Below are positions 19,879-63,840 of a stretch of 64,000 nt of DNA, in pieces (the first letter of the stretch is position 1; the number at the start of each line of letters is the position of its first letter). A program made the position numbers and the translations under genes. The DNA is from Octopus sinensis. Lineage: Eukaryota. Location: contig NW_021833290.1 of the NCBI RefSeq assembly GCF_006345805.1, positions 1-64,000 on the forward strand. The letters run 5' to 3'. Under the pieces are notes generated by a model, which saw only the letters and a list, made by a program, of their open reading frames with translations, did no database searches and was not told the origin of the DNA.

Positions 19879-19879
19879 C

Positions 19880-20140: not shown

Positions 20141-20299
20141 GATGTTGAGCTCCACATATTTTCAGCAACTTATTAGTTTTTGTCAAATTTATTTATTTTG
20201 ATTATTATTTCTCTTTATCACAGGTTTTGTAGGAGTTCCTTGAGGCTTGCATTGTGGGAGTTCCTGGACACTTGCTCATTCTAATGTCGACCCTCCAGT

Positions 20300-25146: not shown

Positions 25147-25193
<47 letters not shown>

Positions 25194-25194
25194 A

Positions 25195-25250
<56 letters not shown>

Positions 25251-26338: not shown

Positions 26339-26399
<61 letters not shown>

Positions 26400-27171: not shown

Positions 27172-27232
<61 letters not shown>

Positions 27233-27256
27233 GTATGTATGTATATGTATATATGC

Positions 27257-27331
<75 letters not shown>

Positions 27332-30064: not shown

Positions 30065-30142
<78 letters not shown>

Positions 30143-44500: not shown

Positions 44501-44578
44501 AAGAAGAAAAGAAGAAGAAGAAGAGAAGAAGAAGAAGAAGGAGAAGAAGAAGGAGAGGGATAATAATAATAATAATAA

Positions 44579-44609
<31 letters not shown>

Positions 44610-47600
44610 AAGAAGAAGAAGAAGAAGAAGAAAAGAAGAAGAAGAAGAAGAAGAAAAGAAGAAGAAGAACAAAAACTTCAACAACAATAACAAAAAAATT
44701 ATCTCGGTGGAATTGTGGATAAATAACCACACGGCACCACAGAATCAACAGAACAATGTGAAATAAAATAGTAGCTAAAACTTATATTAATAGTGCAGAT
44801 ACAGACATACATATGAACATACACATATATTTTCAGGAATAACATTTTTATGCAGACAATTATCAACTGACAGTCATTGACATGTTCAGACTCAATCAAA
44901 TAAATATAACACGAATATGAGAACTGAATATGATTTACAGTAATAGAGAGTGAGAAAACATGGAAATAAGGGGATATTAAATTTAAAGACATAGTATATT
45001 CCTCATGTATAAACGACAACATTGAAAGAACTTACAATTCCTCTAAGCTGTGAAGGCCTTGAAACATCTCCTTTTCAATCCTTGAAATTTTATTGTTGCC
45101 AAGGTTTCTGAAGCAGGAAACAATATTGGTTAGATTGACATAGTGTGAATTGCGATAACATATTCAATATTGTTCTTTATGAAAAGGGAAAAAATATAGG
45201 AAAATAACACAAGAAGAAGAGGAACAGGAAAGAGATTGAGAAGAAGAAGAAGCCAAAGAAGAAGGGGAGGTGGGGAAGGGGAAACGGAGAAGACAAGGAG
45301 GAAGTGGAGGGGGAGAAGAAGTAGAAGAAGGAGGAGTTGGAGGAGGAGGAACGAAGGAGAGGAAAATGGCTGAGGACGGAGTAGGACAAGGAGATGAAGG
45401 AGGGGTGGGGGAAATAGGAGGAGGAGCAGAGGGTAGAGTAGAAGAAAAAGATGTAAATTATTAAAAAGAGGAGGAGGGTGAGGAGACGAAGAAGAATAGG
45501 CAAAAGAGAAGAAAAAGAAGAAGAAGAGGAAAAAGAAGAAGAAGAAGAAAGCGATGAAGAAGGAGGAGGAAGAGGAGAAGGAGGGAGAGAATTACAAAAA
45601 AGAAGATGAGAAAAAAAAGAAGAAGGAGGAGAAGGAGGAGAAGTAGAAGAAAGTAGAAGTAGGAGTGGAAGAAAAAGAGGAAGAAGAAAGAGGATAAGGA
45701 GGGGGAGGGGAAAGTAAGAATTACAAGAAGGAGGAGGAGGAGGAGAAGAAGAAGAAAAGAAGAAGAAGAAGAAGCAGAAGAAGAAAAAGGAGGAGGAGTA
45801 GAGGTAGAAGAAGAGGAAGAAGAACAGGAAGCTGTAGAAGAAAGAGAAGACGGAAGAAGAGGCAAGAGGTGGAGGAGGAGGATGAAGGGGAAGAAGAAGT
45901 TAGAGAAAAAGAAAAAAAGAAGAAGAAGGAGGAGGAGAATAACAAAATGAAACTATGAAGAAGAAAGAGCCGAAAGAGGAGAAGTAGATGAAGAAATAGA
46001 AAGTAGAATAAGAAGAAGTAGAGGAAAAAGAAAAATAAGGAGGAAGATGAGGAGGAGAAGTACAAGAAGAAGAAGAAGAAGAAGAAGAAGAAGAAGAAGA
46101 AGGAGAAGAAGAAGAAGAAGGAGAAGAAGAAGGAGGAGGAGGAGGAGGAGGAGAAGAAGAAGAAGTAGAAGTAGAAGAAGAAAGAAGAAAAAGAAGAAGA
46201 AAAGAAGACGAAGAACAAGAAGAAGGAAAAGGAGGAGGATGAAGGGGAAGAAGAAGAGAAAGGAGGAGGATGAGAAGAATATGAAGAAGTAGAAAGTGTA
46301 GAAGAGGTAGAAGACGAAGAAAAAAAGAAGTCGTAGAAAGAGAAGAAGAAAAGGAAAATGATGGAGGAAGACGGGGAACAGAAGTAGAAGAAGAAGACGA
46401 AGAAGGAGAAGAAGAAGGAGAATAAGAATTAGAAGAAGAAGAAGAAAAAGGAGCAAGAGAGGAGAGGGGTGGAGATGGACGAGAATTACAAGAAGAAAAA
46501 GGAGGGGTGGGGTGGTGAGAGGAGGAAGTGAATTACAAGAAGTAAATGTAGATGAAGAAGAAGAGAATAAAATTAGAAGAAGAAAAGAAAGAGGAGGAGG
46601 TGGAGGAGGAGAAGAAGAAGAATAGTTTAAAAGAAGGAGAAGAAGAAGAAATTGAAGAAGAGAAGAAAAAGAAGGAGGAGGATGATGAGCAGGAGGTGAG
46701 GCGGAGGAAGGAGAAGACGAAGAAGAAGAAGAAGAAGAAGAAGAAGAAGAATAGTTTAAAAGAAGAAGGAGAAGAAGAAGAAAATGAAGAAGAAGAGAAG
46801 AAAGTAAGGATAGGAGGAGGCATGAGGTTGGCTAAGGAATAAGAAGAAGGAAGACTAAGACTAAGAATATAAGAAGAAGACGACGACGACGAAGAATAAG
46901 AATAATAAGAAGAAGAGTATAAGGAAGAATAAAGAATAGAAAAGAAGAAGAAGAAGAAAAAGACGAAGACGAAGAAGAAGAAGAAAGGAAGAAGAAGAAG
47001 GGGAGTAGAAGAAAAAGAAGAAGAAGAAGAAGAAGAAAGAAGTTATATTGAAAATCATGGTGTTGAAGACGAAACTGAAATTGTTCTTAAAATATCAGGA
47101 AATAATTCAAGGATAGATCGATAAATTTTGGGCGAGAAGACATGGCTGAAAAATCATGGAATATACGGAATCAGAAATCAACATATTCAAATGCACTCAT
47201 ACGCATTCTTATATTCATAGTATCAACGACGGAATGCGGTATGCACACTCACATCACACATATTCCCACTCACCCTTGTGGAAATATGGTGAGAGAGATT
47301 ATTTCATATCGCTTCATTGTCAGAAGAATATTAGAAAACACACGCTTACAAGAAATATATCAGCAGTTTAATTGTATCAGGCCAAATATTCGAGCTTACA
47401 AGTACAGTATGTATTTCAGGTTTACAGATAGAATGTATGTGACTATATTATTCGAATATATATTTTCCGCTTCCAATTTAGTTGCTCTATTACATAAATA
47501 ACGTGAAGTGAATGACAAAATTCGAAGTTGAATGATAATATCGAAACATGAAGGAGAATATTGAAATAGGAAATGGAGGAGGATGTAAAATATAAAATAA

Positions 47601-50600
47601 AGGAATAATATATTCACATTTCACACAGAACTACACTTATATATGAACATACACATATACTTCAGCTAAAAATATTTGATGCAAACATGTAAACTCACAA
47701 ACGTTACCATTTCTAATACAAATTCATATCAAAATCATTGAAATTGGGGAACAAAATGAGTTATTTAGATGCGAATTGAAACGAAGCAAGTACAAGAAAG
47801 GAACATTATATTTTTCCTATTATTTCACATTTTCTCTCAAATTCTCTCTCTTTCTTTCACATTGTCTCGCTCTCTCATATTCTTCTTTGTATATTCCTAA
47901 ATCGTGTTGATTCTACAAATTCGAATTGATTTTGTTTGGTGGAGTCTGAAATTTTATACATTTGTGAGCTTATATATCAGCATCAATTATTACATTCGGA
48001 AAATAATATCAAGAAACTGAAGAACTTACAATTCTGTTAAATTGCAAAGCCCCGTGAATACACCTTCTTTGATGGTTGCAATGTTGTTGGAACCAATATT
48101 TCTATAGCAGTAAAGAAAGAGTAAAATAGATTATATGGAAAATATTTGTGATACGACATCAAACACTGTGACTTCAGAATGAAAGGAAGAAAAAGAAGAA
48201 ATATAACGAAGAAGAAAAAGAAGAAGAAGGAGAAGAAGAAGAAGAAGAAGAAGAAGAAGAAGAGAAGGTAGATGAAGAGAAGAAGAAGAATAAAAAGAAG
48301 AATAAGGAGGAGGAAAAGGAGAAGAAGAAGAAGAAGAAGAAGTAGAAGAAAACGTAGAAGAAGAAAGGAGAAGATAAAGGAGAAGAAGACCTAGAAGAAG
48401 AAAAAGAAGAAGAGGAGGCGGAGGAGGCGGAGGAGGCGGAGGAGGCGGAGGAGTCGGAGGTGGAGGAGAGGTGGGGATGTTAGGAGGAGGACAAAGGAAT
48501 GGATGACTGAGGAGGGGCAGCTGGGGATAGCAGCAGAAGGAGCAGGAAGAGCAGGAGGATGAGTATAAGAGGAAGAATTGGAAGAGAATGGAAAAGAGGG
48601 AGACCATTGAAGAAGCAGAAAGTACAGAGAAGAAAAAGAACAAGAAAAAAAGAAGGAAAAGAAGAAGACAAAGAAGAAGTAGAACAGGAAGAAAAGTAAC
48701 AAGAAGAAGAAGAAGATGAAGTAGAAGAAGAATAAGAGGAAGAAGAAGAAGAAGAAGACGACGAAGAAGAAGAGGAACATGCAGGAGATGAAGAAGGAAA
48801 GAAGAAGACGAAGAAGATGAAGAAGAAAAATAGAAGAAGAGAAAGAAGAAATTAAAGAAAAAGGAGGATGAGTAGGACGAAGAGGGGAGGTTGAGGAGAA
48901 GAATTGCAATAAGAAGAAGAAGAAAAAGGAGAAGGAGGTGGAGGAGGAGGGGGAATAGGAGAATTACAAGAAGAAGAACAAAACAACAACAATAACAAAA
49001 AAATTATCTCGGTGGAAGTGTGGATAAATAACCACACGGCACCACAGAATCAACAGAACAATGTGAAATAAAATAGTAGCTAAAACTTATATTAATAGTG
49101 CAGATACATACATACATATGAACATACACATATATATTTTCAGGAATAACATTTTTATGCAGACAATTATCAACTGACAGTCATTGACATGTTCAGACTC
49201 AATCAAATAAATATAAGACGAATATGAGAACTGAATATGATTTACAGTAATAGAGAGTGAGAAAACATGGAAATAAGGGGATATTAAATTTAAAGACATA
49301 GTATATTCCTCATGTATAAACGACAACATTGAATGAACTTACAATATCTCTAAGTTGTGAAGGCCTTGAAACATCTCTTTTTCAATCCTTGAAATTTTAT
49401 TGAAGGAAAGAGATCTGAAGCAGGAAACAATATTGGTTAGATTGACATAGTGTGAGTTGCGATAACATATTCAATATTGTTCTTTATGAAGAGGGACAAA
49501 ATTATAGGAAAATAATACAAGAAGAAGGGGAACAGGAAAGAGTTTGAGGAGAAGAAGAAGACAAAGACGAAGGGGATGAGCGGAAGGGGAAACGGAGAAG
49601 ACGAGGAGGAAAAGGAGGGGGGAGAAGAAATAGGAGGAGTTCGAGGAGGAGGTGGGGAGGAGAAGAAAAAGCTTGAGGTCGGAAGAGGACAAGGAGATGC
49701 AGGAGGGGTGGGGGAAATAGGAGGAGGAGCAGAGGGTAGAGTAGAAGAAAAAGATGTAAATGATTAAAAAGAGGAGGAGGAGGATGAGGAGACGAAGAAG
49801 AATAGGTAAAAGAAAAAGAAGAAGAAGAGGAAAAAGAAAAAGAAGTAGAAGAAGGCGATGAAGAAGGAAGAGGAAGGGGAGAAGGAGGGAGAGAATTACA
49901 AAAAAGAAGATGAGGATAAAAAGAACGAGAAGGAGAAGGAGGAGAAGTAGAAGAAAGTAGAAGTGGGTTAGGAAGAAAAAGAAGAAGAAGAAGGAGAAGT
50001 AGAAGAAGAATAAATGAAGTAGAAGAAAGAGAAGTTGAAGAAAAAGAAAAATAAATAGGAAGATGAGGAGGAGAAGTAGAAGAAGAACAACAACAACAAT
50101 AACAAAAAATTTATCCTGGTGGAAGTGTGGATAAATAACCACACGGCACCACAGAATCAAGAGAACAATGTGTAAGAAAATAGTAGCTAAAACTTGTATT
50201 AATAGTGCAGATACATACATACATATGAACATACACATATATATTTTCAGGAATAACATTTTGATGCAGACAATTATCAACTGACAGTCATTGACATGTT
50301 CAGACTCAATCAAATAAATATAAGACGAATATGAGAACTGAATATGATTTACAGTAATAGAGAGTGAGAAAACATGGAAATAAGGGGATATTAAATTTAA
50401 AGACATAGTATATTCCTCATGTATAAACGACAACATTGAAAGAACAATTTCTCTAAGTTGTGAAGGCCTTGAAACATCTCTTTTTCAATCCTTGAAATCT
50501 TATTGTTGCGAAGACCTCTGAAGCAGGAAACAATATTGGTTAGACTGACATAGTGTGAATTGCGATAACATATTCAATATTGTTCTTTATGAAAAAGAAC

Positions 50601-53600
50601 AAAATTATAGGAAAATAATATGAGAGGAAGAGGAACAGGAAAGAGATTGAGGAGAAGAAGAAGCCAAAGAAGAAGGGGAGGAGGGGAAGGGGAAACGGGG
50701 AAGACAAGGAGGAAGTGGAGGGGGAAAAGAAGTAGAAGAAGGAGGAGTTGGAGGAGAAGGAACGAAGGGGAGGAAAAAGGCTGAGGACGGAGTAGAACAA
50801 GGAGATGCAGGAGGGGTGAGGGAAATAGGAGGAGGAGCAGAGGGTAGAGTAGAAGAAAAATATGTAAATTATTAAAAAGAGGAGGAGGGTGAGGAGACGA
50901 AGAAGAATAGGTAAAAGAGAAGAAAAAGGAAAAGAAGAGGAAAAAGAAGAAGCAGAAGAAGGCGATGAAGAAGGAGGAGGAAGAGGAGAAGGAGGGGGAG
51001 AATTACAAAAAAGAAGATGAGAAGAAGAAGAAAGAGGATGAGAAGGAGAAGTAGAAGAAAGTAGAAGAAAGAGGATAAGGAGGGGGAGGGGAAAGGAAGA
51101 ATTACAAGATGAGGAGAAGAAGAAGAAGAAGCAGAAGAAGAAAAGGAGGAGTAGAGGTAGAAGAAGAAGAAGAAGAACAGGAAGCAGTAGAAGAAAGAGA
51201 AGAAGAAGGAAGAGGGGGCAAGAGGTGGAGGAGGAGGATGAAGGGGAAGAAGAAGTTAGAGAAAAAGAAAAAAAGAAGAAGGAGGAGGAGAATAACAAAA
51301 TGAAAATATGAAGAAGAAAGAGCCGAAAGAGGAGAAGTAGACGAAGAAATAGAAAGTAGAATAAGAAGTAGAAGAAAATGAAATAGAAGAAAGAGAAGTT
51401 GAAGAAAAAGAAAAATAAGGAGGAAGATGAGGAGAAGTACAAGAAGAAGAAGAAGAAGAAGAAGAAGGAGGAGGAGGAGGAAGAGACGTAGAAGCAGAAG
51501 TAGAAAAAGAAGAAAAAGAAGAAGAAAAAAGAAGACGAATAAGAAGAAGGAAGAGGAGGAGGATGAAGGCGAAGAAGAAGAGAAAGGAGGAGGAGGAGAA
51601 GAATATGAAGAAGTATAAAGTGTAGAAGAAGTAGAAGACGAAAAAAAAAGAAGTGGTAGAAAGAGAAGAAGAAAAGGAAAAAGATGGAGGAAGACGGGGA
51701 ACAGAAGTAGAAGAAGAAGACGAAGAAGGAGAAGAACAAGGAGAATAAGAATAAGAATTAGAAGAAGAAGAAGAAAAAGGAGCAAGAGAGGAGAGGGGTG
51801 GAGGTGGACGAGAATTACAAGAAGAAAAAGGAGGGGTGGGGTGGTGAGAGGAGGAAGTGAATTACAAGAAGTAAATGTAGATGAAGAAGAAGAGAATAAA
51901 ATTAGAAGAAGAAAAGAAAGAGGAGGAGGTGGAGGAGGAGAAGAAGAAGAATAGTTTAAAAGAAGGAGAAGAAGAAGAAATTGAAGAAGAGAAGAAAAAG
52001 AAGGAGGAGGATGATGAGCAGGAGGTGAGGCGGAGGAAGGAGAAGAAGACGAAGAAGAAGAAGAAGAAGGAGAAGAAGAAGAAGAAGAAGACGACGACGA
52101 CGAAGAAGAAGTAAAAGAAGAAGAAGGAGAAGAAGAAAAGAAGAAGAAGAAGAAGAAGAAAGAAGAAGAAGAAGAAGAAGAAGATACATTAAAAATCATT
52201 GTCTTCAAGACGACCCTTAAAATGTTTTCATAATATCATGAAATAATTCAAGGATAGAATGAAAAATTTTGGGCGAGAAGACATGGCTGAAAAATCATGG
52301 AATATACGGAATCAGAAATCAACATATTCAAATGCACTCATACGCATTCTTATATTCACAGTATCAACGACGGAATGCGCTCTGCACACTCACATCACAC
52401 ATATTCCCACTCACCCTTGCGGAAATATGGTGAGAGAGATTATTTATTTAATATCGCTTCATTGTCACAAGAATATTAGAAAACACACGCTTACAAGAAA
52501 TATATCAGCAGTTTAATTGTATCAAGCCAAGTATTCCAGCTTATAAGTACAGTAAGTATTTCAGGTTTACAGATAGATGTATGTGACTATATTATTCGAA
52601 TATATATTTTCCGCTTCCAATTCAGTTGCTCTATTACATAAATAACGTGAAGTGAATGACAAAATTCGAAGTTGAATGATAATATCGAAACACGAAGGAG
52701 AATATTGAAATAAGAAATGGAGGAGGATGTAAAATATAAAATAAAGGAATAATATAGTCACATTTCACACAGAACTACACTTATATATGAACATACACAT
52801 ATACTTCAGCTAAAAATGTAACCTCACAAACGTTACCATTTCTAATACAAATTCATATCAAAACCTTTGAAATTTGGGGAACAAAAAAGAGTTAATGAGA
52901 TGCGAATTGAAACAAAGCAACTACAAGAAAGGAACATTATATTTTTCCTATTATTTCACTTTCTCTCTCAAATTCTCTCTCTTTCTTTCACATTGTCTCG
53001 CTCTCTCATATTCTCTTTGTATCTTCCTAAATCGTGTTCATTCTTCAAATTCGAATTGATTTTGTTTGGTGCAGTCTGAAATATTATATATTTGTGAGCT
53101 TATATATCAGCATCATTACTTTCGGAAAATAATATCAAGAAATTGAACAAACTTACAATGTCTTTAAATTCGAAAGGCCCGTGAATAAACCTTCTTTGAT
53201 GGTTGAAATGTTGTTCCATCTCAGATCTCTATAGCAGTAAAGAAAGAGTAAAATAGATTATATGGAAAATATATGTGATACGACACCAAACACTGTGATT
53301 TCAGAATGAAAGGAAGAAAAAGAAGAAAGATAACGAAGAAAAAGAAGAAGTAGACGGAGGAGGAGGAGAAGAAGTAGAAGAAGAAGATGAGTAGAAGAAG
53401 AAAGTAGAAGAAGGAGAATTGGGCAGGAGGTGGAGGGGGCGGAAGAGAAGGTGTAGTGGGGAGGTTAGGAGGAGGACCAAGGAATGGATGACTGAGGAGC
53501 GGCAGCTGGGGGTAGAAGCAGAAGGAGCAGGAAGAGCATGAGAATGAGAATAAGAGGAAGAATTGGCAGAGAATGGAAAAGAGGGAGACAAGTGACGGAG

Positions 53601-55286: not shown

Positions 55287-55317
<31 letters not shown>

Positions 55318-58300
55318 AAGAAGGAGGAGGAAAAGTAGAAGAAGAAAAGAACAAAAAGAAGAAGAAGACGACGACGACGAAGAAGAAGTAGAAGAAGAAG
55401 AAGGAGAAGAAGAAGAAGAAGAAGTAAAAGAAGAAGAAGAAGAAGAAGAAGAAGAAGAAGAAGATACGTTGAAAATCATGGTGTTCAAGACGAAACTGAA
55501 AATGTTGTCATAATATCAGGAAATAATTCAAGGATAGAGCGGTAAATTTTGGGCGAGAAGACATGGCTGAAAAATCAGGGAATATACGGAATCAGAAATC
55601 AACATATTCAAACGCACTCATTCGCATTCTTATAGTCATAGTATCAACGACGGAATGCGCTATGCACACTTACATCACTCATAATCCCACTCACACTTGT
55701 GGAAATATGGTGAGAGAGATTATTTATTTCATATCGCTTCATTGTCAGAAGAATATTAGAAAACACACGCTTACAAGAAATATATCAGCAGTTTAATTGT
55801 ATCAGGCCAAATATTCCAGCTTACAAGTACAGAAAGTATTTCAGGTTTACAGATAGAATGTATGTGACTATATTATTCGAATATATATTTTCCGCTTCCA
55901 CTTCAGTTACATAAATAACGTGAAGTGAATGACAAAATTCGAAGTTGAATGATAATATCGAAACACGAAGGAGAATATTGAAATAAGAAATGGAGGAGGA
56001 TGTAAAATATAAAATAAAGGAATAATATAGTCACATTTCACACAGAACTACACTTATATATGAACATACACATATACTTCAGCTAAAAGTATTTGATGCA
56101 AACATGTAAACTCACAAACGTTACCATTTCTAATACAAATTCATATCAAAACCTTTGAAATTTGGGGAACAAAAATGAGTTATTGAGATGCAAATTGAAA
56201 CAAAGCAACTACAATAAAGGAACATTGTATTTTTCCTATTATTTCACTTTCTCTCTCAAATTCTCTCTCTTTCTTTCACATTGTCTCGCTCTCTCATATT
56301 CTTTTTGTATCTTCCTAAATCGTATTCATTCTACAAATTCGAATTGATTTTGTTTGGTGCAGTCTGAAAGTTTATACATTTGTGAGCTTATATGTCAGCA
56401 TCAATTATAACTTTCGGAAAATAGTATCAAGAAATTAAACGAACTTACAATTCTTTTAAATTTGAAAGCCCCGTGAATGTACCTTCTTTGATGGTTGAAA
56501 TGTTGTTCTCGTACAGATCTCTATAGCAGTAAAGAAAGAGTAAAATAGATTATATGGAAAATATTTGTGATTCGATATCAAACACTGTGACTTCAGAATG
56601 AAAGGAAGAAAAAGAAGAAAGATAACGAAGAAGAAGAAGAAGAAGAAGAAGATTAAGACAGGAAAAGAAGAAGAAGAAGAAAGGAAAAGAAGAAGAAAAA
56701 GAAAGAAAAAGGAGAAGAAGAAGCAGTAGTAGAAGAAAAAGAAAAGTAGAAGAAGGGGAATTAGGGACGAGGTGGAGGATGTGGGGGTGGAGCAGAGGTG
56801 GGGAGGTTAGGAGGAGGACAAAGGAAGGGATGCCTGTTCAGGGGGCCGCTGAGGGTAGCAGCTGAAGGAGCAGGAAGAGCTGGAGACTGAGAATAAGAGG
56901 GAGAATTGGCAGAGAATGGAAAAGAGGGAGACCAGTGACGGAGCATAAAGTACAGAGAAGAAAAAGAAGAAGAAGACAAAGAAGAAGAAGAAGAACAAAA
57001 TTAGAAGAGGAAGAAGGAGGAGGAGAAGAAGTAGAAGAAGAAGCAGAAGAAGAAGAAAACAAAGAAAATTAAGAAGAAGAAGAAAAAAGAAGGCAAAGAA
57101 GAAGTAGAACACGAAGAAAAGTAACAAGAAGAAGAATAAGTAGAAGAAGAAGAAGAGGAAGAAGAAGAAGACAAAGAAAAGGAAGAAGAAGAAGAAGAGG
57201 AAGAAGAAGAAGACGACGAAGAAAAGGAACATGAAGGAGATGGAGAAGGAAAGAAGAAGACGAAGAAGATGAAGAAGAAGAAAAATAGAAGAAGAGAAAG
57301 AAATTGAAGAAAAAGGAGGATGAGTAGGACGAAGAGGGCATGTTGAGGAGGAGAATTGCAATAAGAAGAAGAAAATGAGGAGAAGGAGGTGGAGGAGGAG
57401 GGGGAATAGGAGAATTACAAGAAGAAGAACAAAAACAACAACAACAACAACAAAAATATTATCTCGGTGGAAGTGTGGATAAATAACCACACGGCACCAC
57501 AGAATCAAGAGAACAATGTGTAAGAAAATAGTAGCTAAAACTTATATTAATAGTGCAGATACAGACATACATATGAACATACACATATATATTTTCAGGA
57601 ATAACATTTTTATGCAGACAATTATCAACTGACAGTCATTGACATGTTCAGACTCAATCAAATAAATATAAGACGAATATGAGAACTGAATATGATTTAC
57701 AGTAATAGAGAGTGAGAAAACATGGAAATAAGGGGATATTAAATTTAAAGACATAGTATATTCCTCATGTATAAACGACAACATTGAAAGAACTTACAAT
57801 TCCTCTAAGCTGTGAAGGCCTTGAAACATCTCCTTTTCAATCCTTGAAATTTTATTGTAGGAAAGATCTCTGAAGCAGGAAACAATATTGGTTAGATTAA
57901 CATAGTGTGAATTGCGATAACATATTCAATATTGTTCTTTATGAAGAGGGACAAAATTATAGGAAAATAATACAAGAAGAAGAGGAACAGGAAAGAGATT
58001 AAGGAGAAGATGAAGAAGAAAGAGAGGAGGGGAAGGGGAAAAGAAGAAGTCAAGGAGGAAGAGTAGGGGGGAGAAGAAGTAGAAGAAGGAGGAGTTGGAG
58101 GAGGAGGAGGAGGAGGAGGGGAGGTGAAGTAGGATGAGGACAGGGAAGGACAAGGAGATGCAGGAGGGGGAGGAAAATAGGAGGAGGTGCAGAGGGTAGA
58201 GTATAAGAAGATATAGAAGATTAAAAGTGGAGGAAGAAAAAGAAGTAGAAGGAAGAGGAGGGTGAAAAGAAGAAAAAGAAGAAGAAGAAAAAGAAGAAGT

Positions 58301-61300
58301 AAAACGAGAAGAAGAAGCGGAAAATGAAGAAGAAGTAGAAGCAGGAAAAAAGGAGAAGAAGGAAGAAGAGAAAAATAGGTGGAGGCGGAGGTGGAAGAGG
58401 AAGGGGAAGAAGAAGAAGACAGATGAGAAGGAGGAGGAGGAGGAGGAGGAGGAAGGGGAAGTAGAAGAAAAAGAAGGAGGAGAAGGAGGAGGAGGAAGAG
58501 TAGTAGAAGAAGAAGAATAAGATGAAGAAGAAGAAGATGACACTTTGAATATCATGGTATTCAAGATGAATCTGGAAATGTTCTCAAGATATCAGGAAAT
58601 AATTCAAGGATAGATCGAGAAATTTTGGGCGAGAAGACATGGCTGAAAACTCAGGGAATATACGAAATCAGAAATCAACATATTCAAATGCACTCATACG
58701 CATTTTTATTTTCATAGTATCAACAACGGAATGCGGTATGCACACTCACATCACACATAATCCCACTCACACTTGTGGAAATATGGTGAGAGAGATTATT
58801 TATTTCATATCGCTTCATTGTCAGAAGAATATTAGAAAACACACGCTTACAAGAAATATATCAGCAGTTTAATTGTATCAGGCCAAATATTCCAGCTTAC
58901 AAGTACAGAAAGTATTTCAGGTTTACAGATAGAATGTATGTGACTATATTATTCGAATATATATTTTCCGCTTCCACTTCAGTTACATAAATAACGTGAA
59001 GTGAATGACAAAATTCGAAGTTGAATGATAATATCGAAACACGAAGGAGAATATTGAAATAAGAAATGGAGGAGGATGTAAAATATAAAATAAAGGAATA
59101 ATATAGTCACATTTCACACAGAACTACACTTATATATGAACATACACATATACTTCAGCTAAATGTATTTGATGCAAACATGTAAACTCACAAACGTTAC
59201 CATTTCTAATACAAATTCATATCAAAATCATTGGAATTTGGGGGAAAAATGAGTTATTGAGATGCGAATTGAAACAAAGCAACTACAATAAAGGAACATT
59301 ATATTTTTCCTATTATTTCACTTTCTCCCCCAAATTCTCTCTCTTTCTTTCACATTGTCTCGCTTTCTCCTATTCTCTTTGTATCTTCTTAAATCTTGTT
59401 CATTCTACAAATTTGAATTGATTTTGTTTAGTTCAGTCTGAAATTTTATACATTTGTGAGCTTATATATCAGCATCAATTAATACTTTCGGATAATAGTA
59501 TCAAGAAATTAAACGAACTTACACTGTTTTTAAATTGGAAAGCCCCGTGAATACACCTTCTTTGATGGTTGAAATGTTGTTCCCGAAAAGATATCTATAG
59601 CAGTAAAGAAAGAGTAAAATAGATTATATGGAAAATATTTGTGATACGACATCAAACACTGTGACATCTGAATGAAAGGAAGAAAAAGAAGAAAGATAAC
59701 GAAGAAGAAAAGGAAGAAGAAGGAGGAGGAGGAGGCGAAGAGGAAGAAAAGTAGAAGAAGAAGAATTAGTAGAAGAAGAAAGGAGAAGAGGTAGTAGAAG
59801 AAAAAGAAGCGAAAGAAGGAATACCTGGAAAAAGGAGGAGGAGGATGATAAAAGGGAAGAAGAAGTAGAAGAAAAAGTAAAAGAAGAAGAAGAAGGGGAT
59901 GGGAGGAAAAGAATAACAAGAAGAAGAAGATAAATATAAGAAAGACGAGAGGAGGAGGAGGAGAAGTAGGTGAAGAAGTAGAAATAAGAAGAAGAAGAAG
60001 GAGAAGAAGAACAACAACAAGTCGAAATAGAAGGAGGATGAGGAGGGGGAGGGGAAGAAGAAATATTGCAAGAAGAAGGAAGGAAAGAACAGGAAGAAGA
60101 AGATGTAGAAGTAGTAGAAGCAAGAAAAAGAAGAAAGATAACGAAGAAGAAAAGGAAGAAGAAGGAGGAGGAGGAGGCGAAGAGGAAGAAAAGTAGAAGA
60201 AGAAGAATTAGTAGAAGAAGAAAGGAGAAGAGGTAGTAGAAGAAAAAGAAGCGAAAGAAGGAATACCTGGAAAAAGGAGGAGGAGGATGATAAAAGGGAA
60301 GAAGTAGAAGAAAAAGTAAAAGAAGAAGAAGAAGGGGATGGGAGGAAAAGAATAACAAGAAGAAGAAGATAAATATAAGAAAGACGAGGAGGAGGAGGAG
60401 GAGAAGTAGATGAAGAAGTAGAAATAAGAAGAAGAAGAAGGAGAAGAAGAACAACAACAAGTCGAAATAGAAGGAGGATGAGGAGGGGGAGGGGAAGAAG
60501 AAATATTGCAAGAAGAAGAAGGAAGGAAAGAACAGGAAGAAGAAGATGTAGAAGTAGTAGAAGCAAGAAAAAGAAGAAGATGAAGGAGGTGGAGGAGAAG
60601 GAGATAGAGAATAACAAAAACAGAAGTGAAGAAGAAGAAGGAGGAGGAGGAGGAGTAGAAGAAGAAGTAGAAAGAAGAAGAGGAAGAAAAAAAGAAAAAG
60701 ACAAAGAAGAAGAAGAAGGAAGGGGAGGAAAAAGGAGGAGGAGGAGTGTGAAGGAGGAGAATAAGTAGGAGAACATGAAAAAGAAGAAGAAGATGAAGGA
60801 GGAGGAGGTTGAGAATAACAAAAAGAAGAATATAAGAAGAAGAAAGAGGAGTAGGAGGAGAAGTAGATGAAGAAGTAGAAAGTAGTGGTAGAAGAAGACA
60901 TAGAAGAAGAAGAAAAAAGAAGTAGAAGAATGAGAAGAAGAAATGAAAAAGAAGAAGGAAGGAACAGAAGAAGAAGAATTAGAAGAAGAAGCAGAAGAAG
61001 AAGAAAATGAAGCAGGAGAGGAGGGGAGGAGGAGAATAACAAGAAGAAAAAGGAGGAGGCGCGGAGAGGATTGGGTAGAAAAAAAGAAGAGGAAAAAAGA
61101 AGTAGAAGAAGGAAGGGGAAAAAGGAGGAGGAAGAAGATGAAAGGGAAAAAGTAGGGGTAGAAGAAAAAGAAGAAGAAGAAGAACAAGGAGGAGGAGGAG
61201 GAGGAGTAGATGAAGAAGTTGAAAGTAGAAGAGGAAGAAGTGGAAGAAGAAGAAAAAAGGAGAAGCGAGAGAAGAAGAAGGTTAAGAAGAAGTAGTAGAG

Positions 61301-61612
61301 AGAGAAGAAGAAGAAGAAAAAGAAGAAGAAGAAGGAGGAGAAGAAGGTGCAGCAGGAGGAGAGGAACAGAAGGAAGAAGAAGAAAAAGAAGAAGAAGAAG
61401 AAGAAGAAGAAGAAGAAAAAAGGAGAAGCGAGAGAAGAAGAAGAAGGAGGAGGAGGAGGAGAAGTAGATGAAGAAGAAGAAAAAGAAGAAGAAGAAGAAG
61501 GAAAAGAAGAAGAAAACGAAGGAAAAGAAGAAGAAGGCAGAATACGAAATGACAAAAAGATGAAGAAGAAGGCGGAGAAGGAGAAATAGAATAAGAAAAA
61601 GAACAAAAAGAA

Positions 61613-61644
<32 letters not shown>

Positions 61645-63840
61645 AAAATATAAAGCGGGAGAAGAAGAAGAAGAAGAACAACAACAACAACAACAACAAC
61701 AAAAAGAAGAAAAAGAGGAAGAAGAAGAAGAAGAAGTGGAAAAAGAAAAAGATAAAGAGGGAGAAGAAGAAGAACAACAACAAAAAGAAGAAGAAGAAGA
61801 AGAAGAAGAAGAAGAAAAGATAAAGAGGGAGAAGAAGAAGAAGAAGAAAAAGAAGAAGAAAAAGAAGAAGAAGAAGAAGAAGAAGAAGATGACAATTTAA
61901 AAATGATGGTGTTCATGATGAAACTGAAAATGTTCTCATAATATCAGGAAATAATTCAAGGATAGAGCGATAAATTTTGGGCGAGAAGACATGGCTGAAA
62001 AATCAGGGAATATACGGAATCAGAAATCAACATATTCAAATGCACTCATACGCAATCTTATATTCATAGTATCAACGACGGAATGCGGTATGCACACTTA
62101 CATCACACATATTCCCACTCACCTTTGTGGAAACATGGTGAGAGAGATTATTTATTTCATATCGCTTCATTGTCACAAGAATATTAGAAAACACACGCTT
62201 ACAAGAAATATATCAGCAGTTTAATTTATCAGGCCAAATATTCCAGCTTACAAGTACAGTAAGTATTTCAGGTTTACAGATAGAATGTATGTGACTATAT
62301 TATTCGAATATATATTTTCCGCTTCCACTTCAGTTACATAAATAACGTGAAGTGAATGACAAAATTCGAAGTTGAATGATAATATCGAAACACGAAGGAG
62401 AATATTGAAATAAGAAATGGAGGAGGATGTAAAATATAAAATAAAGGAATAATATAGTCACATTTCACACAGAACTACACTTATATATGAACATACACAT
62501 ATACTTCAGGTAAAAATATTTGATGCAAACATGTAAACTCACAAACGTTACCATTTCTAATACAAATTCATATCAAAATCATTGAAATTTGGGAACAAAA
62601 ATGAGTTATTGAGATGCGAATTGAAACAAAGCAACTACAATAAAGGAACATTATATTTTTCCTATTATTTCACTTTCTCTCTTAAATTCTCTCTCTTTTT
62701 TCACATTGTCTCGCTCTCTCCTATTCTCTTTGTATCTTCCTAAATCGTATTCATTTTACAAATTTGAATTGATTTTGTTCGGTGTAGTCTGAAATATTAT
62801 ACATTTGTGACCTTATATATCAGCATCAATAATATCAAGAAACTGAACGAACTTAAAATTCTTTTAAATGTGAAAGCCCCGTGAATGCTCCTTCTTTGAT
62901 GGTTGCAATGTTGTTGTTCCACAGTTCTCTATAGCAGTAAAGAAAGAGTAAATTAGATTATATGGAAAAAATATGTGATACGACATCAAACACAGTGACA
63001 TCTGAATGAAAGGAAGAAAAAGAAGAAAGATAACGAAGAAGAAGAAGAAGAAGAAGAAGAAGGGGAAGAAGAAGAAGAAGAAGGAGAAGAACAAGAAGAA
63101 GAAGAAGAAGAAGAAGAAGAGGAAGTAAAAGAAGACGAAGACAAAGAAAAGGAAGAAGAAGAAGAAGAAGAGGAAATAGAAGAAGACGACAAAGAAGACG
63201 GAACATGAAGGAGATGAAGAAGGAAAGAAGAAGAGGAAGTATAAAAAGAAGAAAAAGAAGAAGAGAAAGAAGAAATTGAAGAAAAAGGAGGATGAGTAGG
63301 ACGAAGAGGGGAGGTTGAGGAGGAGAATTGCAATAAGAAGAAGAAAATTAGGAGAAGGAGGTGGACGAGGAGGGGGAATAGGAGAATTACAAGAAGAAGA
63401 ACAAAAACAACAACAACAACAACAAAAATATTATCTCGGTGGAAGTGTGGATAAATAACCACACGGAACCTCAGAATCAACAGAACAATGTGTAAGAAAA
63501 TAGTAGCTAAAACTTATATTAATAGTGCAGATACAGACATACATATGAACATACACATATATATTTTCAGGAATAACATTTTTATGCAGACAATTATCAA
63601 CTGACAGTCATTGACATTTCAGACTCAATCAAATAAATATAAGACGAATATGAGAACTGAATATGATTTACAGTAATAGAGAGTGAGAAAACATGGAAAT
63701 AAGGGGATATTAAATTTAAAGACATAGTATATTCCTCATGTATAAACGACAACATTGAAAGAACTTACAATTTCTCTAAGCTGTGAAGGCCTTGAAACAT
63801 CTCTTTTTCAATCCTTGAAATTTTATTGTAGCCAAGATCT
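21816..63840 (-). CDS. Multi-exon gene model (5' end outside window): LRR array - LRRCT - Ly6/uPAR-like - SEA-like - HRM; adhesion-GPCR-like ectodomain
   Basis: 21 minus-strand exons with AG acceptors and mostly GT donors. Phases chain LRR(2-2) > LRRCT(2-1) > Ly6a(1-0) > Ly6b(0-1) > 1-0 > 0-2 > 2-1 > HRM(1-2) > HRM(2-1) after restoring four exons with 1-2 nt homopolymer losses. HRM motif C-x-WPxTxxGxTAxIPC...ATRHC...C-x4-GxWxxPDxSxC. The 31086-31174 exon does not fit the chain. Confidence 0.85.
23371..23485 (-). CDS. HRM domain exon 1 ([38 protein letters not shown])
   Basis: gcttctttttcag / gttcgt, 115 nt, phase 1-2; C...WPxT..G.TA..PC...ATR.C motif of GPCR hormone-receptor domains. Confidence 0.88.
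24889..25043 (-). CDS. SEA-like segment exon 3 ([51 protein letters not shown])
   Basis: tttttatttcag / gtaagt, 155 nt, phase 2-1, open. Confidence 0.85.
25251..25728. mobile_element. Penelope-like non-autonomous cassette with 107-bp inverted terminal copy, in (TA)n
   Basis: 25251-25357 is the reverse complement of 25622-25728; contains a hammerhead motif; a related copy lies at ~16808-17110. Confidence 0.65.
25335..25377 (-). ncRNA. Minimal type I hammerhead motif, family 4 variant
   Basis: ccac-CTGAAGA-ttgtc(ggagca)gacat-GAAA-catttg-TA-gtgg; loop II differs from 16888-16930 while the stem is largely kept. Confidence 0.68.
27479..28451 (+). mobile_element. 5'-truncated copy of the same RTE family with target-site duplication
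   Basis: Starts inside the ADDA motif and has the same 3' end; flanked by aatacatgcgat at 27467-27478 and 28452-28463. Confidence 0.93.
28528..28580 (-). CDS. SEA-like segment exon 2 ([18 protein letters not shown])
   Basis: cttttgcag / gtaagc, 53 nt, phase 0-2. Confidence 0.82.
28750..29048. mobile_element. MITE-like element with ~90-bp imperfect terminal inverted repeats
   Basis: tattctgaaacgcaggataatgctaat...tctgtcggcggccag versus ctggccgccgacaga...attagcatcatcctgcgtttgagaata. Confidence 0.7.
29570..29651 (-). CDS. SEA-like segment exon 1 ([13 protein letters not shown][K][14 protein letters not shown])
   Basis: ccatag / gtgagt; 82 nt versus 83 nt in the intact paralog at 16410-16492 (one A lost in an A-run). 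SEA label is tentative. Confidence 0.78.
30145..30450 (-). mobile_element. Paralogous R4/Dong-like fragment
   Basis: Same family and same flank as 20300-20870; part of the local duplication. Confidence 0.75.
30641..30823 (-). CDS. Ly6/uPAR-like second-half exon ([56 protein letters not shown]...)
   Basis: tattattacag / gtaagt; CC-x3-LCN three-finger terminal motif; +1 A needed for phase-1 exit. Confidence 0.85.
31086..31174 (-). CDS. Exon [29 protein letters not shown] (degenerate Ly6-like first half)
   Basis: 89 nt, ctattttaag / gtaagc, open, phase 1-0, joins the next exon in frame. Confidence 0.6.
32785..32874 (-). CDS. Ly6/uPAR-like first-half exon ([20 protein letters not shown][N]EVTSCPGTE)
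   Basis: ttgtattctgtag / gtaaac; LQCxxC...C...CP motif; needs +2 A in an AA run to stay open. Confidence 0.7.
33471..33605 (+). mobile_element. RTE-type LINE 3' tip (C2H2-like [21 protein letters not shown] plus 3' UTR) in (TATG)n
   Basis: Zinc-finger terminus typical of RTE ORF2. Confidence 0.55.
33641..34790 (-). mobile_element. Degenerate R4/Dong-like LINE RT region
   Basis: [36 protein letters not shown]. Confidence 0.8.
34855..35065. repeat. (TATG)n microsatellite; others include (TATG)n 33368-33470, (GAT)n ~39040-39185, (CA)n ~3230-3306 and (TA)n at ~6690-6800, 11474-11520, 18205-18350, 19214-19300, 25130-25250, 26330-26397, 27125-27330, 30065-30137 and 41466-41550
   Basis: Direct reading. 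Confidence 0.95.
36257..36462 (+). mobile_element. Second tRNA-derived SINE family (ggcgg..agctggcagaa...ttcaaattcc...); other copies at ~20938-21148(-), 22752-22940(-), 22965-23130(-) and 40222-40390(+)
   Basis: A/B-box-like head and shared body gaggtcgactttgc...ggggtcga across five copies. Confidence 0.75.
36840..37110 (-). mobile_element. Degenerate RTE-like LINE fragment (RT thumb region)
   Basis: [18 protein letters not shown]...EMGFLRK...GHAIRM. Confidence 0.6.
37555..37712 (-). CDS. LRR C-terminal cap exon ([52 protein letters not shown])
   Basis: 158 nt, ttattattacag / gtaagt, phase 2-1, open, N-x-CxC...C...C LRRCT pattern. Confidence 0.88.
38316..38641. mobile_element. MITE-like element with ~77-bp terminal inverted repeats
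   Basis: gtataatagccatctcaatatggctaaccac...ggagatcatcgtc versus gacgatgatctcc...gtggttagccatattgagatggatattatac. Confidence 0.75.
38765..38970 (+). mobile_element. R4/Dong-like RLE C-terminus
   Basis: [12 protein letters not shown]...[14 protein letters not shown]. Confidence 0.7.
39210..39345 (+). mobile_element. R4/Dong-like fragment
   Basis: HGQFEK...[25 protein letters not shown]. Confidence 0.65.
40891..40960 (-). CDS. Terminal LRR exon ([14 protein letters not shown][FLFLPSIVK])
   Basis: Acceptor tgtctctttttcag, donor gtaagc. 70 nt; restoring one T in each of two TT runs gives a 72-nt LRR. Confidence 0.75.
42345..43400 (-). mobile_element. Penelope-like element RT relic interrupted by the CR1
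   Basis: KNH...[21 protein letters not shown]...YCRYID...[26 protein letters not shown]. Confidence 0.65.
42725..43156 (+). mobile_element. CR1-clade LINE 3' end with (TAAAC)n tail
   Basis: LSYEGR...[11 protein letters not shown]...GHSEKL...[10 protein letters not shown]...FKVSLD. Confidence 0.88.
45036..45107 (-). CDS. LRR exon A1 ([23 protein letters not shown])
   Basis: 72 nt, cag acceptor, gtaagt donor, phase 2-2. Confidence 0.93.
48030..48101 (-). CDS. LRR exon B1 ([23 protein letters not shown])
   Basis: 72 nt, tag acceptor, gtaagt donor, phase 2-2. Confidence 0.93.
49343..49414 (-). CDS. LRR exon A2 ([23 protein letters not shown])
   Basis: 72 nt, cag acceptor, gtaagt donor, phase 2-2. 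Confidence 0.93.
50446..50517 (-). CDS. LRR exon A3 ([23 protein letters not shown]), donor damaged
   Basis: 72 nt, cag acceptor. A 4-nt deletion (gaacttacaatt > gaacaatt on + strand) turns donor gtaagt into gttctt. Confidence 0.8.
53157..53228 (-). CDS. LRR exon B2 ([23 protein letters not shown])
   Basis: 72 nt, tag acceptor, gtaagt donor, phase 2-2. Confidence 0.93.
54393..54464 (-). CDS. LRR exon A4 ([23 protein letters not shown])
   Basis: 72 nt, cag acceptor, gtaagt donor, phase 2-2. Confidence 0.93.
56449..56520 (-). CDS. LRR exon B3 ([23 protein letters not shown])
   Basis: 72 nt, tag acceptor, gtaagt donor, phase 2-2. Confidence 0.93.
57798..57869 (-). CDS. LRR exon A5 ([23 protein letters not shown])
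   Basis: 72 nt, cag acceptor, gtaagt donor, phase 2-2. Confidence 0.93.
59523..59594 (-). CDS. LRR exon B4 ([23 protein letters not shown])
   Basis: 72 nt, tag acceptor, gtaagt donor, phase 2-2. Confidence 0.93.
62857..62928 (-). CDS. LRR exon B5 ([23 protein letters not shown]), donor mutated
   Basis: 72 nt, acceptor ctttactgctatag intact; donor reads ttaagt instead of gtaagt. Confidence 0.8.
63769..63840 (-). CDS. LRR exon A6 (L|[23 protein letters not shown]|L)
   Basis: 72 nt, acceptor tttcctgcttcag, donor gtaagt, phase 2-2, LxxLxLxxNxI consensus. Confidence 0.93.

What the first reader, a model, noticed from the sequence alone, without database searches (positions are those of the whole stretch)
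45095..63840. Hypervariability confined to the xLxxN ligand-face codons while introns stay near-identical
Seen: the first 13 nt of the A exons are AAACCTTGGCAAC, ATCTCTTTCCTTC, AGGTCTTCGCAAC, ATCTCTTGACAGC, AGATCTTTCCTAC and AGATCTTGGCTAC (NLGN, SLSF, GLRN, SLDS, DLSY, DLGY). The B exons give NIGS, DLRW, DLYE, YLFG and ELWN. The structural Leu codon CTT is invariant in the A exons, the rest of each A exon differs at only about three sites plus the last codon, and by eye the introns differ far less than these codons. Established: these x positions form the concave beta-sheet that binds ligand in LRR proteins. Inference: strong diversifying selection, or targeted micro-conversion or mutation, as in immune or chemosensory recognition receptors.
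Basis: partly seen in the sequence, partly recalled or inferred. Interest (0 to 1): 0.88.

Follow-up and report, generated by a model that had tools for sequence, protein, structure and literature searches.

The report
Octopus receptor repeat exons with hypervariable tips
Eleven near-identical 72-base exons of an octopus-specific receptor gene differ almost only at the four amino acids expected to face a ligand, which points to selection for new binding surfaces on very young repeats; this is a familiar evolutionary pattern in an unfamiliar gene family and gene layout.

Summary
On the minus strand lie 11 exons of 72 nt, each encoding one 24-residue leucine-rich repeat (6 type A, 5 type B). Pairwise diversity in the first 13 nt is 0.34 (A) and 0.51 (B). 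It is 0.03-0.05 in the unique intron flanks.

The window is Octopus sinensis. The gene belongs to an Octopus-only family, some of whose paralogues end in GPS and 7tm_2 domains (adhesion GPCRs).

In A exons the variation sits at first and second codon positions. Third positions and the Leu codon stay constant, giving dN/dS of about 6-10 in the variable codons and 0.1-0.4 elsewhere. That supports selection for amino-acid change and argues against targeted hypermutation. B exons are saturated and inconclusive on this test.

The units are mosaics: about 60% of informative site pairs fail the four-gamete test. One exon differs between two assembly copies inside a ~450-bp conversion-like patch. So exchange occurs, but it is not aimed at the variable codons.

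The variable codons are identical in 10 of 11 exons between the two copies and unchanged in a sister-species orthologue, so they are germline-stable.

This copy looks partly decayed: a premature stop, a dead donor and a pseudo-exon. Combinatorial exon skipping is annotated but unproven. Verdict: a new variant of a known kind.

The parts
63769..63840 (-). LRR exon A1 (variable residues DLGY). The first 13 nt, 63828-63840, are the variable patch.
62857..62928 (-). LRR exon B1 (ELWN). Its donor is TT in this window (62855-62856) and GT in the other assembly copy.
59523..59594 (-). LRR exon B2 (YLFG)
57798..57869 (-). LRR exon A2 (DLSY). It is the only exon that differs between the two assembly copies, at 9 of 72 nt.
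57801..58250 (-). Patch of about 450 bp that differs between the two copies. It ends at the 3' end of exon A2, and the downstream intron is 100% identical. It looks like a conversion tract.
56449..56520 (-). LRR exon B3 (DLYE)
54393..54464 (-). LRR exon A3 (SLDS)
53157..53228 (-). LRR exon B4 (DLRW)
50446..50517 (-). LRR exon A4 (GLRN). Its donor is weakened by a 4-nt deletion (gttctt) in both copies.
49343..49414 (-). LRR exon A5 (SLSF)
48030..48101 (-). LRR exon B5 (NIGS). It has canonical splice sites but is used in none of the 16 RefSeq models read.
45036..45107 (-). LRR exon A6 (NLGN). It has canonical splice sites but is used in none of the 16 RefSeq models read.
44224..63348 (-). Intron polypyrimidine tracts of (CTT/CCT)n type on the coding strand, 0.2-2.3 kb each, one or more per intron. 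They make up 51% of 44-64 kb and 1% of the rest of the window.
40891..40960 (-). Remnant of the family's terminal '[11 protein letters not shown]' LRR exon. It is 70 nt with a frameshift and an in-frame stop in both copies. It is an intact 72 nt in paralogue L004.
37555..37712 (-). LRR C-terminal cap exon ([18 protein letters not shown]...ILDYSQCQ)
32785..32874 (-). First exon of the Cys-rich domain that follows the cap. In this copy a 2-nt deletion gives an in-frame TGA at 32810-32812 (...CSGIKCNE*).
4280..30826 (-). Further exons of the same gene. They match paralogue ectodomains (rest of the Cys-rich domain, HRM-like region) at 30641-30826, 28527-28580, 24890-25045, 23373-23486, 21814-21957, 16407-16493, 16017-16070, 5731-5817 and 4280-4327.

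Best explanation
The region is the repeat-encoding part of a germline Octopus sinensis gene. The gene belongs to an Octopus-restricted family with the layout signal peptide, LRRNT, n x 24-residue LRR, LRRCT, Cys-rich domain, HRM-like region and, in paralogues, GPS and a class-B 7TM domain.

Each LRR is one 72-nt exon, and every intron splits the Leu codon after its second base. Any subset of exons therefore stays in frame. The repeated unit is an exon, 0.5-1.1 kb of unique intron and a long pyrimidine tract.

The units multiplied recently. Unequal exchange and short-tract gene conversion keep them 95-98% alike. Positive selection for amino-acid replacement has driven apart four positions per repeat. 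These are LRR motif positions 3, 5, 7 and 8, which are the last full codon plus codons 1, 3 and 4 of each exon. Once set, these residues are kept, both between haplotypes and between sister species.

Shown here: the anatomy, the roughly tenfold divergence contrast, the codon-position asymmetry in A exons, the mosaicism, and the stability of the variable codons.

Inferred: that these residues bind a ligand, that the pyrimidine tracts promote exchange, and when the diversification happened relative to duplication.
For: - **Anatomy and divergence contrast:**
- **Species and locus:** the window matches O. sinensis contig VCDQ01004985.1 at 98.6-99.3% identity. RefSeq proteins are 100% identical to exons B3, A3, B4, A4 and A5.
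- **Family:** 41 hits to the non-LRR part, all from Octopus. P0205 has LRR_8, GPS and 7tm_2. P0176 has LRR and GPS.
- **Selection in A exons:** in the variable codons, pairwise diversity is 0.63-0.69 at positions 1-2 and 0.07-0.11 at position 3, and Leu CTT is invariant. dN is 1.0-1.1 and dS 0.10-0.20. Fisher p=0.0076.
- **No divergence shoulder:** the sequence next to the patch is no more divergent than the background.
- **Whole family:** positions 1, 3, 4 and 23 carry 2.0-3.2 bits of entropy, and nearly all others carry 1.35 bits or less.
- **Decoupling from introns:** variable-codon distance is not correlated with intron distance (rho 0.16 for A and -0.08 for B). The rest of the exon is correlated (0.48 and 0.53).
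- **Exchange between units:** 71/120 (A) and 278/465 (B) informative site pairs fail the four-gamete test. One allelic patch of about 450 bp was found.
- **Stability:** 10 of 11 exons are identical between the two copies. The motifs DLQD, ILWN, DLDG and DLRN are the same in O. sinensis L002 and in O. vulgaris P0176.
- **Fold:** LRR pLDDT is 85-98 with strands every 24 residues. The best PDB match is hagfish VLR 2o6q (TMt 0.84), followed by Nogo receptor and LGR4.
Against: - In B exons the silent-type sites inside the patch are also variable: 4/4, against 4/18 third positions elsewhere (p=0.0096). dN/dS there is about 0.9-1.9. The B patches may simply be older than their homogenised flanks, so selection is not shown for B on internal evidence.
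- The sample is small: 6 + 5 units in the window and 28 in all.
- Recombination makes tree-based tests unreliable, and none was run.
- Mosaicism could partly be a polishing artefact of a long-read assembly in repeats. The two contigs come from the same assembly project.
- This gene copy has a premature stop, a dead donor and a pseudo-exon. Selection may therefore have acted on ancestors or paralogues rather than on this copy now.
- No ligand or expression data for this gene were available.
Confidence: 0.7

Rival explanations
1. Old patches in homogenised flanks. The variable patches are ancient repeat identities. Gene conversion has repeatedly homogenised everything around them, and selection only removes conversions that overwrite the patch. 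The low intron divergence then says nothing about the age of the patch.
For: - The mosaic structure and the allelic tract show that conversion is active.
- Variable-codon distance is unrelated to intron distance. Units in different genes (window and L004) are almost as alike (3-5%) as units within one array (2-3%).
- The same or near-same motifs recur across genes: SLSF/SLSS, ELWN/NLWN and NLGN in P0002.
- B-patch silent sites are more variable than silent sites elsewhere.
Against: - In A exons the third positions and the Leu codon inside the patch are as conserved as the introns. Contiguous conversion tracts cannot homogenise these while sparing the bases on either side of them.
- There is no shoulder of raised divergence next to the patch.
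- Even under this model, dN far above dS in A still needs positive selection when the variants arose.
Confidence: 0.3
2. A targeted mutational or templated process acts on these codons, in the germline or somatically. It could be AID/APOBEC-like hypermutation or VLR-like cassette copying.
For: - Divergence is confined very sharply to 13 nt.
- The closest structural match is a hagfish VLR.
- Four-gamete failure occurs even between adjacent variable codons. The pairs GGC/TCC and TAC/AAC occur in all four combinations.
Against: - In A exons the changes avoid third positions and the Leu codon.
- The variable codons are identical between the two copies in 10 of 11 exons, while the surrounding DNA differs mainly in the low-complexity tracts.
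- They are conserved in the sister species.
- Duplicate units in L004 keep the same motif at 3-7% intron divergence.
- The units are ordinary spliced exons inside a complete gene, not intronless donor cassettes.
- Somatic change cannot be seen in a genome assembly and was not tested.
Confidence: 0.04
3. Relaxed constraint or an artefact. The x positions are simply free to drift, or the array is an assembly or pseudogene artefact.
For: - This copy has a premature stop, a TT donor at B1, a weakened donor at A4 and a frameshifted terminal exon.
- It lies on unplaced contigs of a long-read assembly.
Against: - Drift cannot exceed the neutral rate, yet the patch is about 10-fold more divergent than the introns and dN/dS is above 5 in A.
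- All 11 exons keep open frames and the LRR consensus.
- The array is reproduced in a second contig.
- The same pattern is seen in paralogues on chromosome-scale scaffolds and across 89 distinct repeats in two species' annotations.
Confidence: 0.03

Closest known systems
Plant NLR and receptor-like-protein LRR domains (Cf-4/9, Xa21 class): diversifying selection on solvent-exposed xxLxLxx residues with sequence exchange between paralogues (from my own knowledge of that literature)
   Same: Hypervariability is confined to the solvent-exposed x positions of the beta-strand motif. dN exceeds dS there, and the framework is under purifying selection. Paralogues are mosaics made by exchange, and the family shows birth and death, including decayed copies.
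   Different: Here the diversifying units are single-repeat exons inside one gene, separated by kilobase introns. The animal family is linked to a class-B 7TM receptor. The background divergence is so low (2-5%) that the contrast can be seen by eye.
Jawless-vertebrate variable lymphocyte receptors (VLR)
   Same: The scaffold is the same: LRRNT, 24-residue LRRs and LRRCT. Hagfish VLR A29 is the best structural match. Diversity is concentrated at the concave-face positions of otherwise near-identical modules.
   Different: VLR diversity is assembled somatically from intronless flanking cassettes into an incomplete germline gene. Here the modules are spliced exons of a complete germline gene, and the variable codons are stable between haplotypes and species.
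Octopus-specific adhesion-GPCR expansion ('group 3' of Ritschard et al. 2019, PMC6408891)
   Same: It is octopus-restricted and tandemly clustered. It has GPS and adhesion 7TM domains, with LRRs in some members. Branch-level positive selection was reported, with expression in axial nerve cord, suckers and skin.
   Different: That study found no individual sites under selection. It did not describe the one-repeat-per-exon arrays or the variable positions. That the family studied here is the same as 'group 3' is my inference, not a test.
LGR and glycoprotein-hormone receptor genes (one LRR per ~72-nt exon, all in the same phase; from my own knowledge)
   Same: The exon-per-repeat layout is the same, with symmetrical phase. 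The LGR4/5 ectodomains are close structural matches.
   Different: LGRs are class-A receptors with old, diverged repeats and unrelated introns. They have no young tandem exon array.
Arthropod Dscam1 alternative-exon arrays
   Same: Tandem arrays of duplicated, frame-compatible exons encode variable recognition surfaces. Many isoforms are annotated.
   Different: Dscam1 exons are mutually exclusive, with docking and selector RNA pairing. Here the models include several cassettes at once, and the evidence for isoforms is annotation only.

Membership tests
Extracellular 'typical' LRR domain with Cys caps (LRRNT-LRR-LRRCT) | Tandem 24-residue repeats with the LxxLxLxxNxL consensus | tested here: met
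   All 11 exons fit the consensus. Pfam LRR_8 scores E=5e-85 on the RefSeq product of this locus.
Extracellular 'typical' LRR domain with Cys caps (LRRNT-LRR-LRRCT) | Curved solenoid with a parallel beta-sheet on the concave face | tested here: met
   The AlphaFold model has pLDDT 85-98 with strands every 24 residues. Foldseek TMt is 0.84 to VLR 2o6q and 0.75 to Nogo receptor. This is a prediction, not a solved structure.
Extracellular 'typical' LRR domain with Cys caps (LRRNT-LRR-LRRCT) | N- and C-terminal Cys-rich caps | tested here: inconclusive
   The C-cap exon is present at 37555-37712 with a CxC...C...C pattern. The N-cap lies outside the window (in L001), and its Pfam LRRNT score is below the cut-off (E=0.005).
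Adhesion GPCR (class B2) | GAIN/GPS autoproteolysis domain followed by a 7tm_2 domain | not testable with these tools
   The gene runs off the window at position 1 before any such exon, and this copy has a premature stop. Paralogues meet the feature: P0205 has GPS at E=1e-13 and 7tm_2 at E=4e-30, and P0176 has GPS at E=9e-11.
VLR-type somatic LRR assembly | Incomplete germline gene plus flanking intronless donor cassettes | tested here: not met
   Every unit has AG...GT boundaries and sits in frame in a complete gene model.
VLR-type somatic LRR assembly | Somatic, non-germline variants at the variable positions | not testable with these tools
   This needs tissue DNA or cDNA sequencing. Germline stability between the two copies and across species argues against a need for it.
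Dscam-like alternative-exon diversity array | Tandem, frame-compatible duplicated exons | tested here: met
   There are 11 exons of 72 nt, and every intron lies after the 2nd base of the Leu codon.
Dscam-like alternative-exon diversity array | Experimentally supported alternative use of the exons | tested here: inconclusive
   RefSeq lists 13 isoforms of 409, 385, 361 and 337 aa (steps of 24 aa) for this locus. The O. vulgaris annotation, which was built with Iso-Seq data among other evidence, has P0172 and P0173 differing by exactly 3 repeats. Whether long reads support that particular pair is not known. Several RefSeq isoforms are chimeric and look like work-arounds for a 73-nt exon. No reads were examined.
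Dscam-like alternative-exon diversity array | Mutual exclusivity, with docking and selector intron pairing | tested here: not met
   The models contain 5-8 cassettes at once. RNA pairing was not examined.
LRR receptors under diversifying selection at solvent-exposed residues | dN exceeds dS at the x positions and is below dS in the framework | tested here: met
   For A exons, omega is 5.6-10 against 0.13-0.36, and Fisher p=0.0076. B exons are saturated and inconclusive (omega 0.9-1.9).

The most novel reading that the evidence does not exclude
The array is a splicing-based diversity generator. The pyrimidine-rich introns would make each frame-neutral, differently tipped LRR exon an independently skippable cassette. 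One gene, and the family as a whole, could then produce many receptor ectodomains that differ in the number and order of binding-surface modules in octopus sensory or neural cells. That would be Dscam-like logic on a VLR-like scaffold. The evidence does not exclude it. The exons are symmetrical, two annotation pipelines list isoforms that differ by whole repeats, and every intron carries kilobase (CUU/CCU)n tracts of the kind bound by splicing repressors such as PTB. The last point comes from my own knowledge and was not tested.
Probability: 0.15. Interest if true: 0.9.

Novelty: new variant of a known kind. Interest (0 to 1): 0.6.

Why it matters
Hypervariable concave-face residues under selection mark LRR recognition receptors in plants, jawless fish and many invertebrates. 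This report places that mark, site by site, in an octopus-only receptor family. That family's expansion had so far been linked to positive selection only at the branch level, with no sites identified.

The repeats are very young, so the selected positions stand out against an almost unchanged background. This gives a short, testable list of likely ligand-contact residues. It also offers a natural system for watching how duplication, gene conversion and selection build a new binding surface.

If the cassette exons are also used combinatorially, this would be a third independent route to LRR or Ig-type receptor diversity in animals.

Tried and rejected
- **Other LRR exons in the window:** searched for further exons between the array and the cap exon. 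Only a 70-nt frameshifted remnant was found, at 40891-40960. An apparent exon at 37954-38025 was judged spurious.
- **Isoform look-ups:** look-ups of P0001, P0004 and P0171 failed because only the longest product of a gene is on record.
- **O. vulgaris loci:** look-ups of P0005 and P0172 also failed. No cross-species intron comparison or independent-assembly check was therefore possible.
- **O. bimaculoides locus L003:** it holds one diverged unit and 14 kb of N, so it was not informative.
- **Conversion donor:** no donor for either version of exon A2 was found among the loci held. The best match is 94-96%.
- **PHI-type test:** a test of spatial clustering of incompatibilities was not significant (p=0.22 and 0.70). 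Incompatibility is as high between neighbouring sites as between distant ones.
- **Cys-rich domain:** it ends CCxxxxCN, which I first read as Ly6/uPAR-like. It has no Pfam match even at E=1 and was modelled with pLDDT below 50. The label is therefore dropped to 'Cys-rich domain'.
- **Rfam:** no match in the window.
- **Not available:** PAML and HyPhy-type site models, and any RNA-seq data.
Full report
**What is there.**

The + strand of 44-64 kb is strongly purine-rich. Read on the minus strand, it holds eleven exons of exactly 72 nt with AG...GT boundaries. Each exon encodes one 24-residue leucine-rich repeat. Every intron splits a Leu codon after its second base (TT|A), so all exons are frame-compatible with each other.

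There are two exon types. Type A encodes [23 protein letters not shown] and has six copies. Type B encodes xLxxNNI(S/A)[15 protein letters not shown] and has five copies. Their order is A B B A B A B A A B A.

Each type has its own unique intron flanks. Both have about 100 nt upstream. Downstream, A has about 400 nt and B about 990 nt. The rest of each intron is a (CTT/CCT)n-like pyrimidine tract of 0.2-2.3 kb. These tracts fill 51% of the array, against 1% of the rest of the window. They fill 32-54% of paralogous arrays.

**Check of the observation.**

| Region | Pairwise diversity, A | Pairwise diversity, B |
|---|---|---|
| First 13 nt of exon | 0.344 | 0.508 |
| Rest of exon | 0.041 | 0.114 |
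| Unique intron flanks | 0.034-0.041 | 0.046-0.052 |

In both alignments, independently, the exon-start window is the most divergent 13-nt window. There is no shoulder of raised divergence beside it.

Two details were missed. The donor of B1 is TT in this window. The donor of A4 has lost 4 nt.

**Identity of the gene.**

A search with the conceptual protein found Octopus sinensis and O. vulgaris proteins at 64-72% identity as its best hits. Mapped back onto the window, the RefSeq proteins P0001 and P0004 match exons B3, A3, B4, A4 and A5 at 100%.

The window (23934-64000) is collinear with O. sinensis contig VCDQ01004985.1 (locus L001) at 98.6-99.3% identity. That contig is probably the other haplotype or a duplicate contig of the same assembly.

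Downstream on the minus strand lie three further parts:
- An LRR C-terminal cap exon at 37555-37712.
- A Cys-rich domain, with exons at 32785-32874 and 30641-30826.
- Further ectodomain exons down to 4280.

A search with the non-LRR part found 41 proteins, all from Octopus. Paralogues carry LRR_8, GPS and 7tm_2 (P0205) or LRR and GPS (P0176) above Pfam cut-offs. The family is therefore an octopus-specific LRR and adhesion-GPCR group. It is most likely the 'group 3' expansion of Ritschard et al. 2019. That study reported branch-level positive selection, found no selected sites, and reported expression in axial nerve cord, suckers and skin (PMC6408891). The equivalence is my inference.

The Cys-rich domain has no Pfam match, so I do not name it.

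**State of this copy.**

This copy has four defects:
- The Cys-rich exon carries a 2-nt deletion relative to L001, giving ...CSGIKCNE*. This explains the 257-aa RefSeq models.
- The family's terminal '[11 protein letters not shown]' repeat exon is a 70-nt frameshifted remnant in both copies. It is intact in paralogue L004.
- B1 has a TT donor here and a GT donor in L001.
- A 12th unit, upstream in L001, is 73 nt long.

The locus therefore shows birth-and-death decay, or some assembly indels. Even so, all eleven repeat exons are open and fit the consensus.

**Selection.**

In A exons the variation is interleaved at single-base resolution:

| Sites in A exons | Pairwise diversity |
|---|---|
| Positions 1-2 of codons 1, 3 and 4 | 0.63-0.69 |
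| Position 3 of those codons | 0.07-0.11 |
| Leu codon CTT between them | invariant |

This holds for the 6 window units and for 10 units from three loci. Six of 6 replacement-type sites vary, against 1 of 6 silent-type sites (Fisher p=0.0076).

Nei-Gojobori estimates:

| Codons | dN | dS | omega |
|---|---|---|---|
| A, variable codons | 1.0-1.1 | 0.10-0.20 | 5.6-10 |
| A, other 19 codons | 0.013-0.043 | 0.10-0.12 | 0.13-0.36 |
| B, variable codons | 0.9-1.5 | 0.8-1.0 | 0.9-1.9 |

A regional mutator, or protection of an old patch from conversion, would affect the interleaved silent sites as well. For A exons, positive selection for amino-acid change is therefore the best reading.

For B exons the patch is saturated at all positions. 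Its silent-type sites are more variable than third positions elsewhere (4/4 against 4/18, p=0.0096). B patches may therefore be older than their flanks. Selection is supported there only relative to the flanks.

Across 24 distinct A and 65 distinct B repeats in the family, positions 1, 3, 4 and 23 carry 2.0-3.2 bits of entropy. Nearly all others carry 1.35 bits or less. G, S, D, N, Y, W and R are the commonest residues at these positions.

**Exchange between units.**

About 60% of pairs of informative sites fail the four-gamete test: 71/120 in A and 278/465 in B. Neighbouring sites a few tens of bases apart fail as often as distant ones. This indicates a fine mosaic.

Between the window and L001, ten exons and their ±60-nt flanks are identical, apart from the donor base and nearby intron changes at B1. 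Exon A2 differs at 9 of 72 nt (DLSY...HSLEE against SLSY NYIS...HNLER). It lies inside a patch of about 450 bp of differences that stops at the exon's 3' end. The downstream intron is 100% identical. No donor was found among the loci held.

Exchange is therefore real, but it moves whole exons with their flanks. It is not aimed at the variable codons.

Variable-codon distance is unrelated to intron distance (rho 0.16 and -0.08). Distance in the rest of the exon does track intron distance (0.48 and 0.53). Some duplicate units in L004 keep identical motifs at 3-7% intron divergence (NLRE x2, NLWN x2; DLQG x2 differ by one synonymous base). Diversification is thus not clock-like. Either it is episodic after duplication, or the flanks have been homogenised around somewhat older variants. 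I could not separate these two without orthologous arrays from other species, which were not retrievable.

**Stability.**

The four repeats of the L002 gene keep the same residues at all 16 variable positions in the O. vulgaris orthologue P0176. Two framework residues differ. The two species split about 2.5 million years ago according to PMC10700109. Together with the agreement between haplotypes, this argues against continuing hypermutation.

**Structure.**

An AlphaFold model of the RefSeq product has pLDDT 85-98 over the LRR part. A beta-strand recurs every 24 residues and covers [last-codon x]-L-[x1]. Residues x3 and x4 follow directly after it. The best PDB matches are hagfish VLR A29 (TMt 0.84), Nogo receptor, LGR4/5, FLRT and LINGO. 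The variable residues therefore lie at motif positions 3, 5, 7 and 8. These are known to form the concave face (established knowledge of LRR structures). Solvent exposure was not computed.

**Alternative splicing.**

RefSeq lists 13 isoforms for this locus, of 409, 385, 361 and 337 aa. They differ by whole repeats. The O. vulgaris annotation was built with Iso-Seq data among other evidence, and it has two products that differ by exactly three repeats.

Several RefSeq isoforms join half of the 73-nt unit to half of another B exon through internal GAAG|GT sites. These look like work-arounds for the frameshift. Near-identical exon ends also make short-read junctions ambiguous. Exons B5 and A6 appear in no model. 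I treat combinatorial use as possible but unproven.

**Verdict.**

The finding is real. Its main inference, diversifying selection on the ligand face, is supported for A exons and plausible for B exons. The alternatives of targeted mutation or targeted micro-conversion are not supported.

The phenomenon is of a known kind, seen in plant resistance proteins, VLRs and TLRs. It appears here in a new setting: a very young exon-per-repeat array in an octopus-only adhesion-GPCR family.

Noticed in passing
window 32785-32874 (minus), stop at 32810-32812: The first exon of the Cys-rich domain has a 2-nt deletion and one substitution relative to the other assembly copy. This gives an in-frame TGA (...CSGIKCNE*). 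This copy would encode only a secreted LRR fragment, or it is a decaying allele.
   Followed up: partly
window 40891-40960 (minus): Remnant of the family's conserved last repeat exon ([15 protein letters not shown]...). It is 70 nt instead of 72, with a frameshift and a stop, in both assembly copies. It is intact in paralogue L004 at about 52921-52992.
   Followed up: yes
window 62855-62856 and 50442-50445 (minus): The donor of exon B1 is TT here and GT in the other copy. The donor of exon A4 has lost 4 nt (gtaagt to gttctt) in both copies, yet RefSeq models still splice from it.
   Followed up: partly
window 11923-14937 (minus): Broken ORFs with reverse-transcriptase (FADDAALV) and endonuclease-like sequence, in a GC-rich stretch (0.46-0.48). 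This is a non-LTR retrotransposon copy inside an intron of the receptor gene. A fragment of it also matches L001 at 92%.
   Followed up: no
window 38316-38641: An element of about 326 bp with 77-nt terminal inverted repeats that are 95% complementary. It looks like a MITE or foldback element and lies in the intron between exon A6 and the cap exon.
   Followed up: partly
L001 11131-11203 and RefSeq isoforms X2, X4, X7, X8 and X13 of that locus: An extra B unit (YLSE) lies upstream of the window and is 73 nt long because of one extra A. The isoforms that use it join its first half to the second half of another B exon through internal GAAG|GT sites at the same position in both exons.
   Followed up: partly
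window 26700-27450, 28590-28640 and 39000-39200: Long TA/TATG-type and (ATC/ATG)n microsatellites lie in other introns of the gene. They are unrelated to the pyrimidine tracts of the array.
   Followed up: no
window 62813-62830 (minus) versus L001 13944-13960: A 17-nt insertion or deletion difference between the two copies, in the intron just downstream of exon B1, next to the donor change.
   Followed up: no
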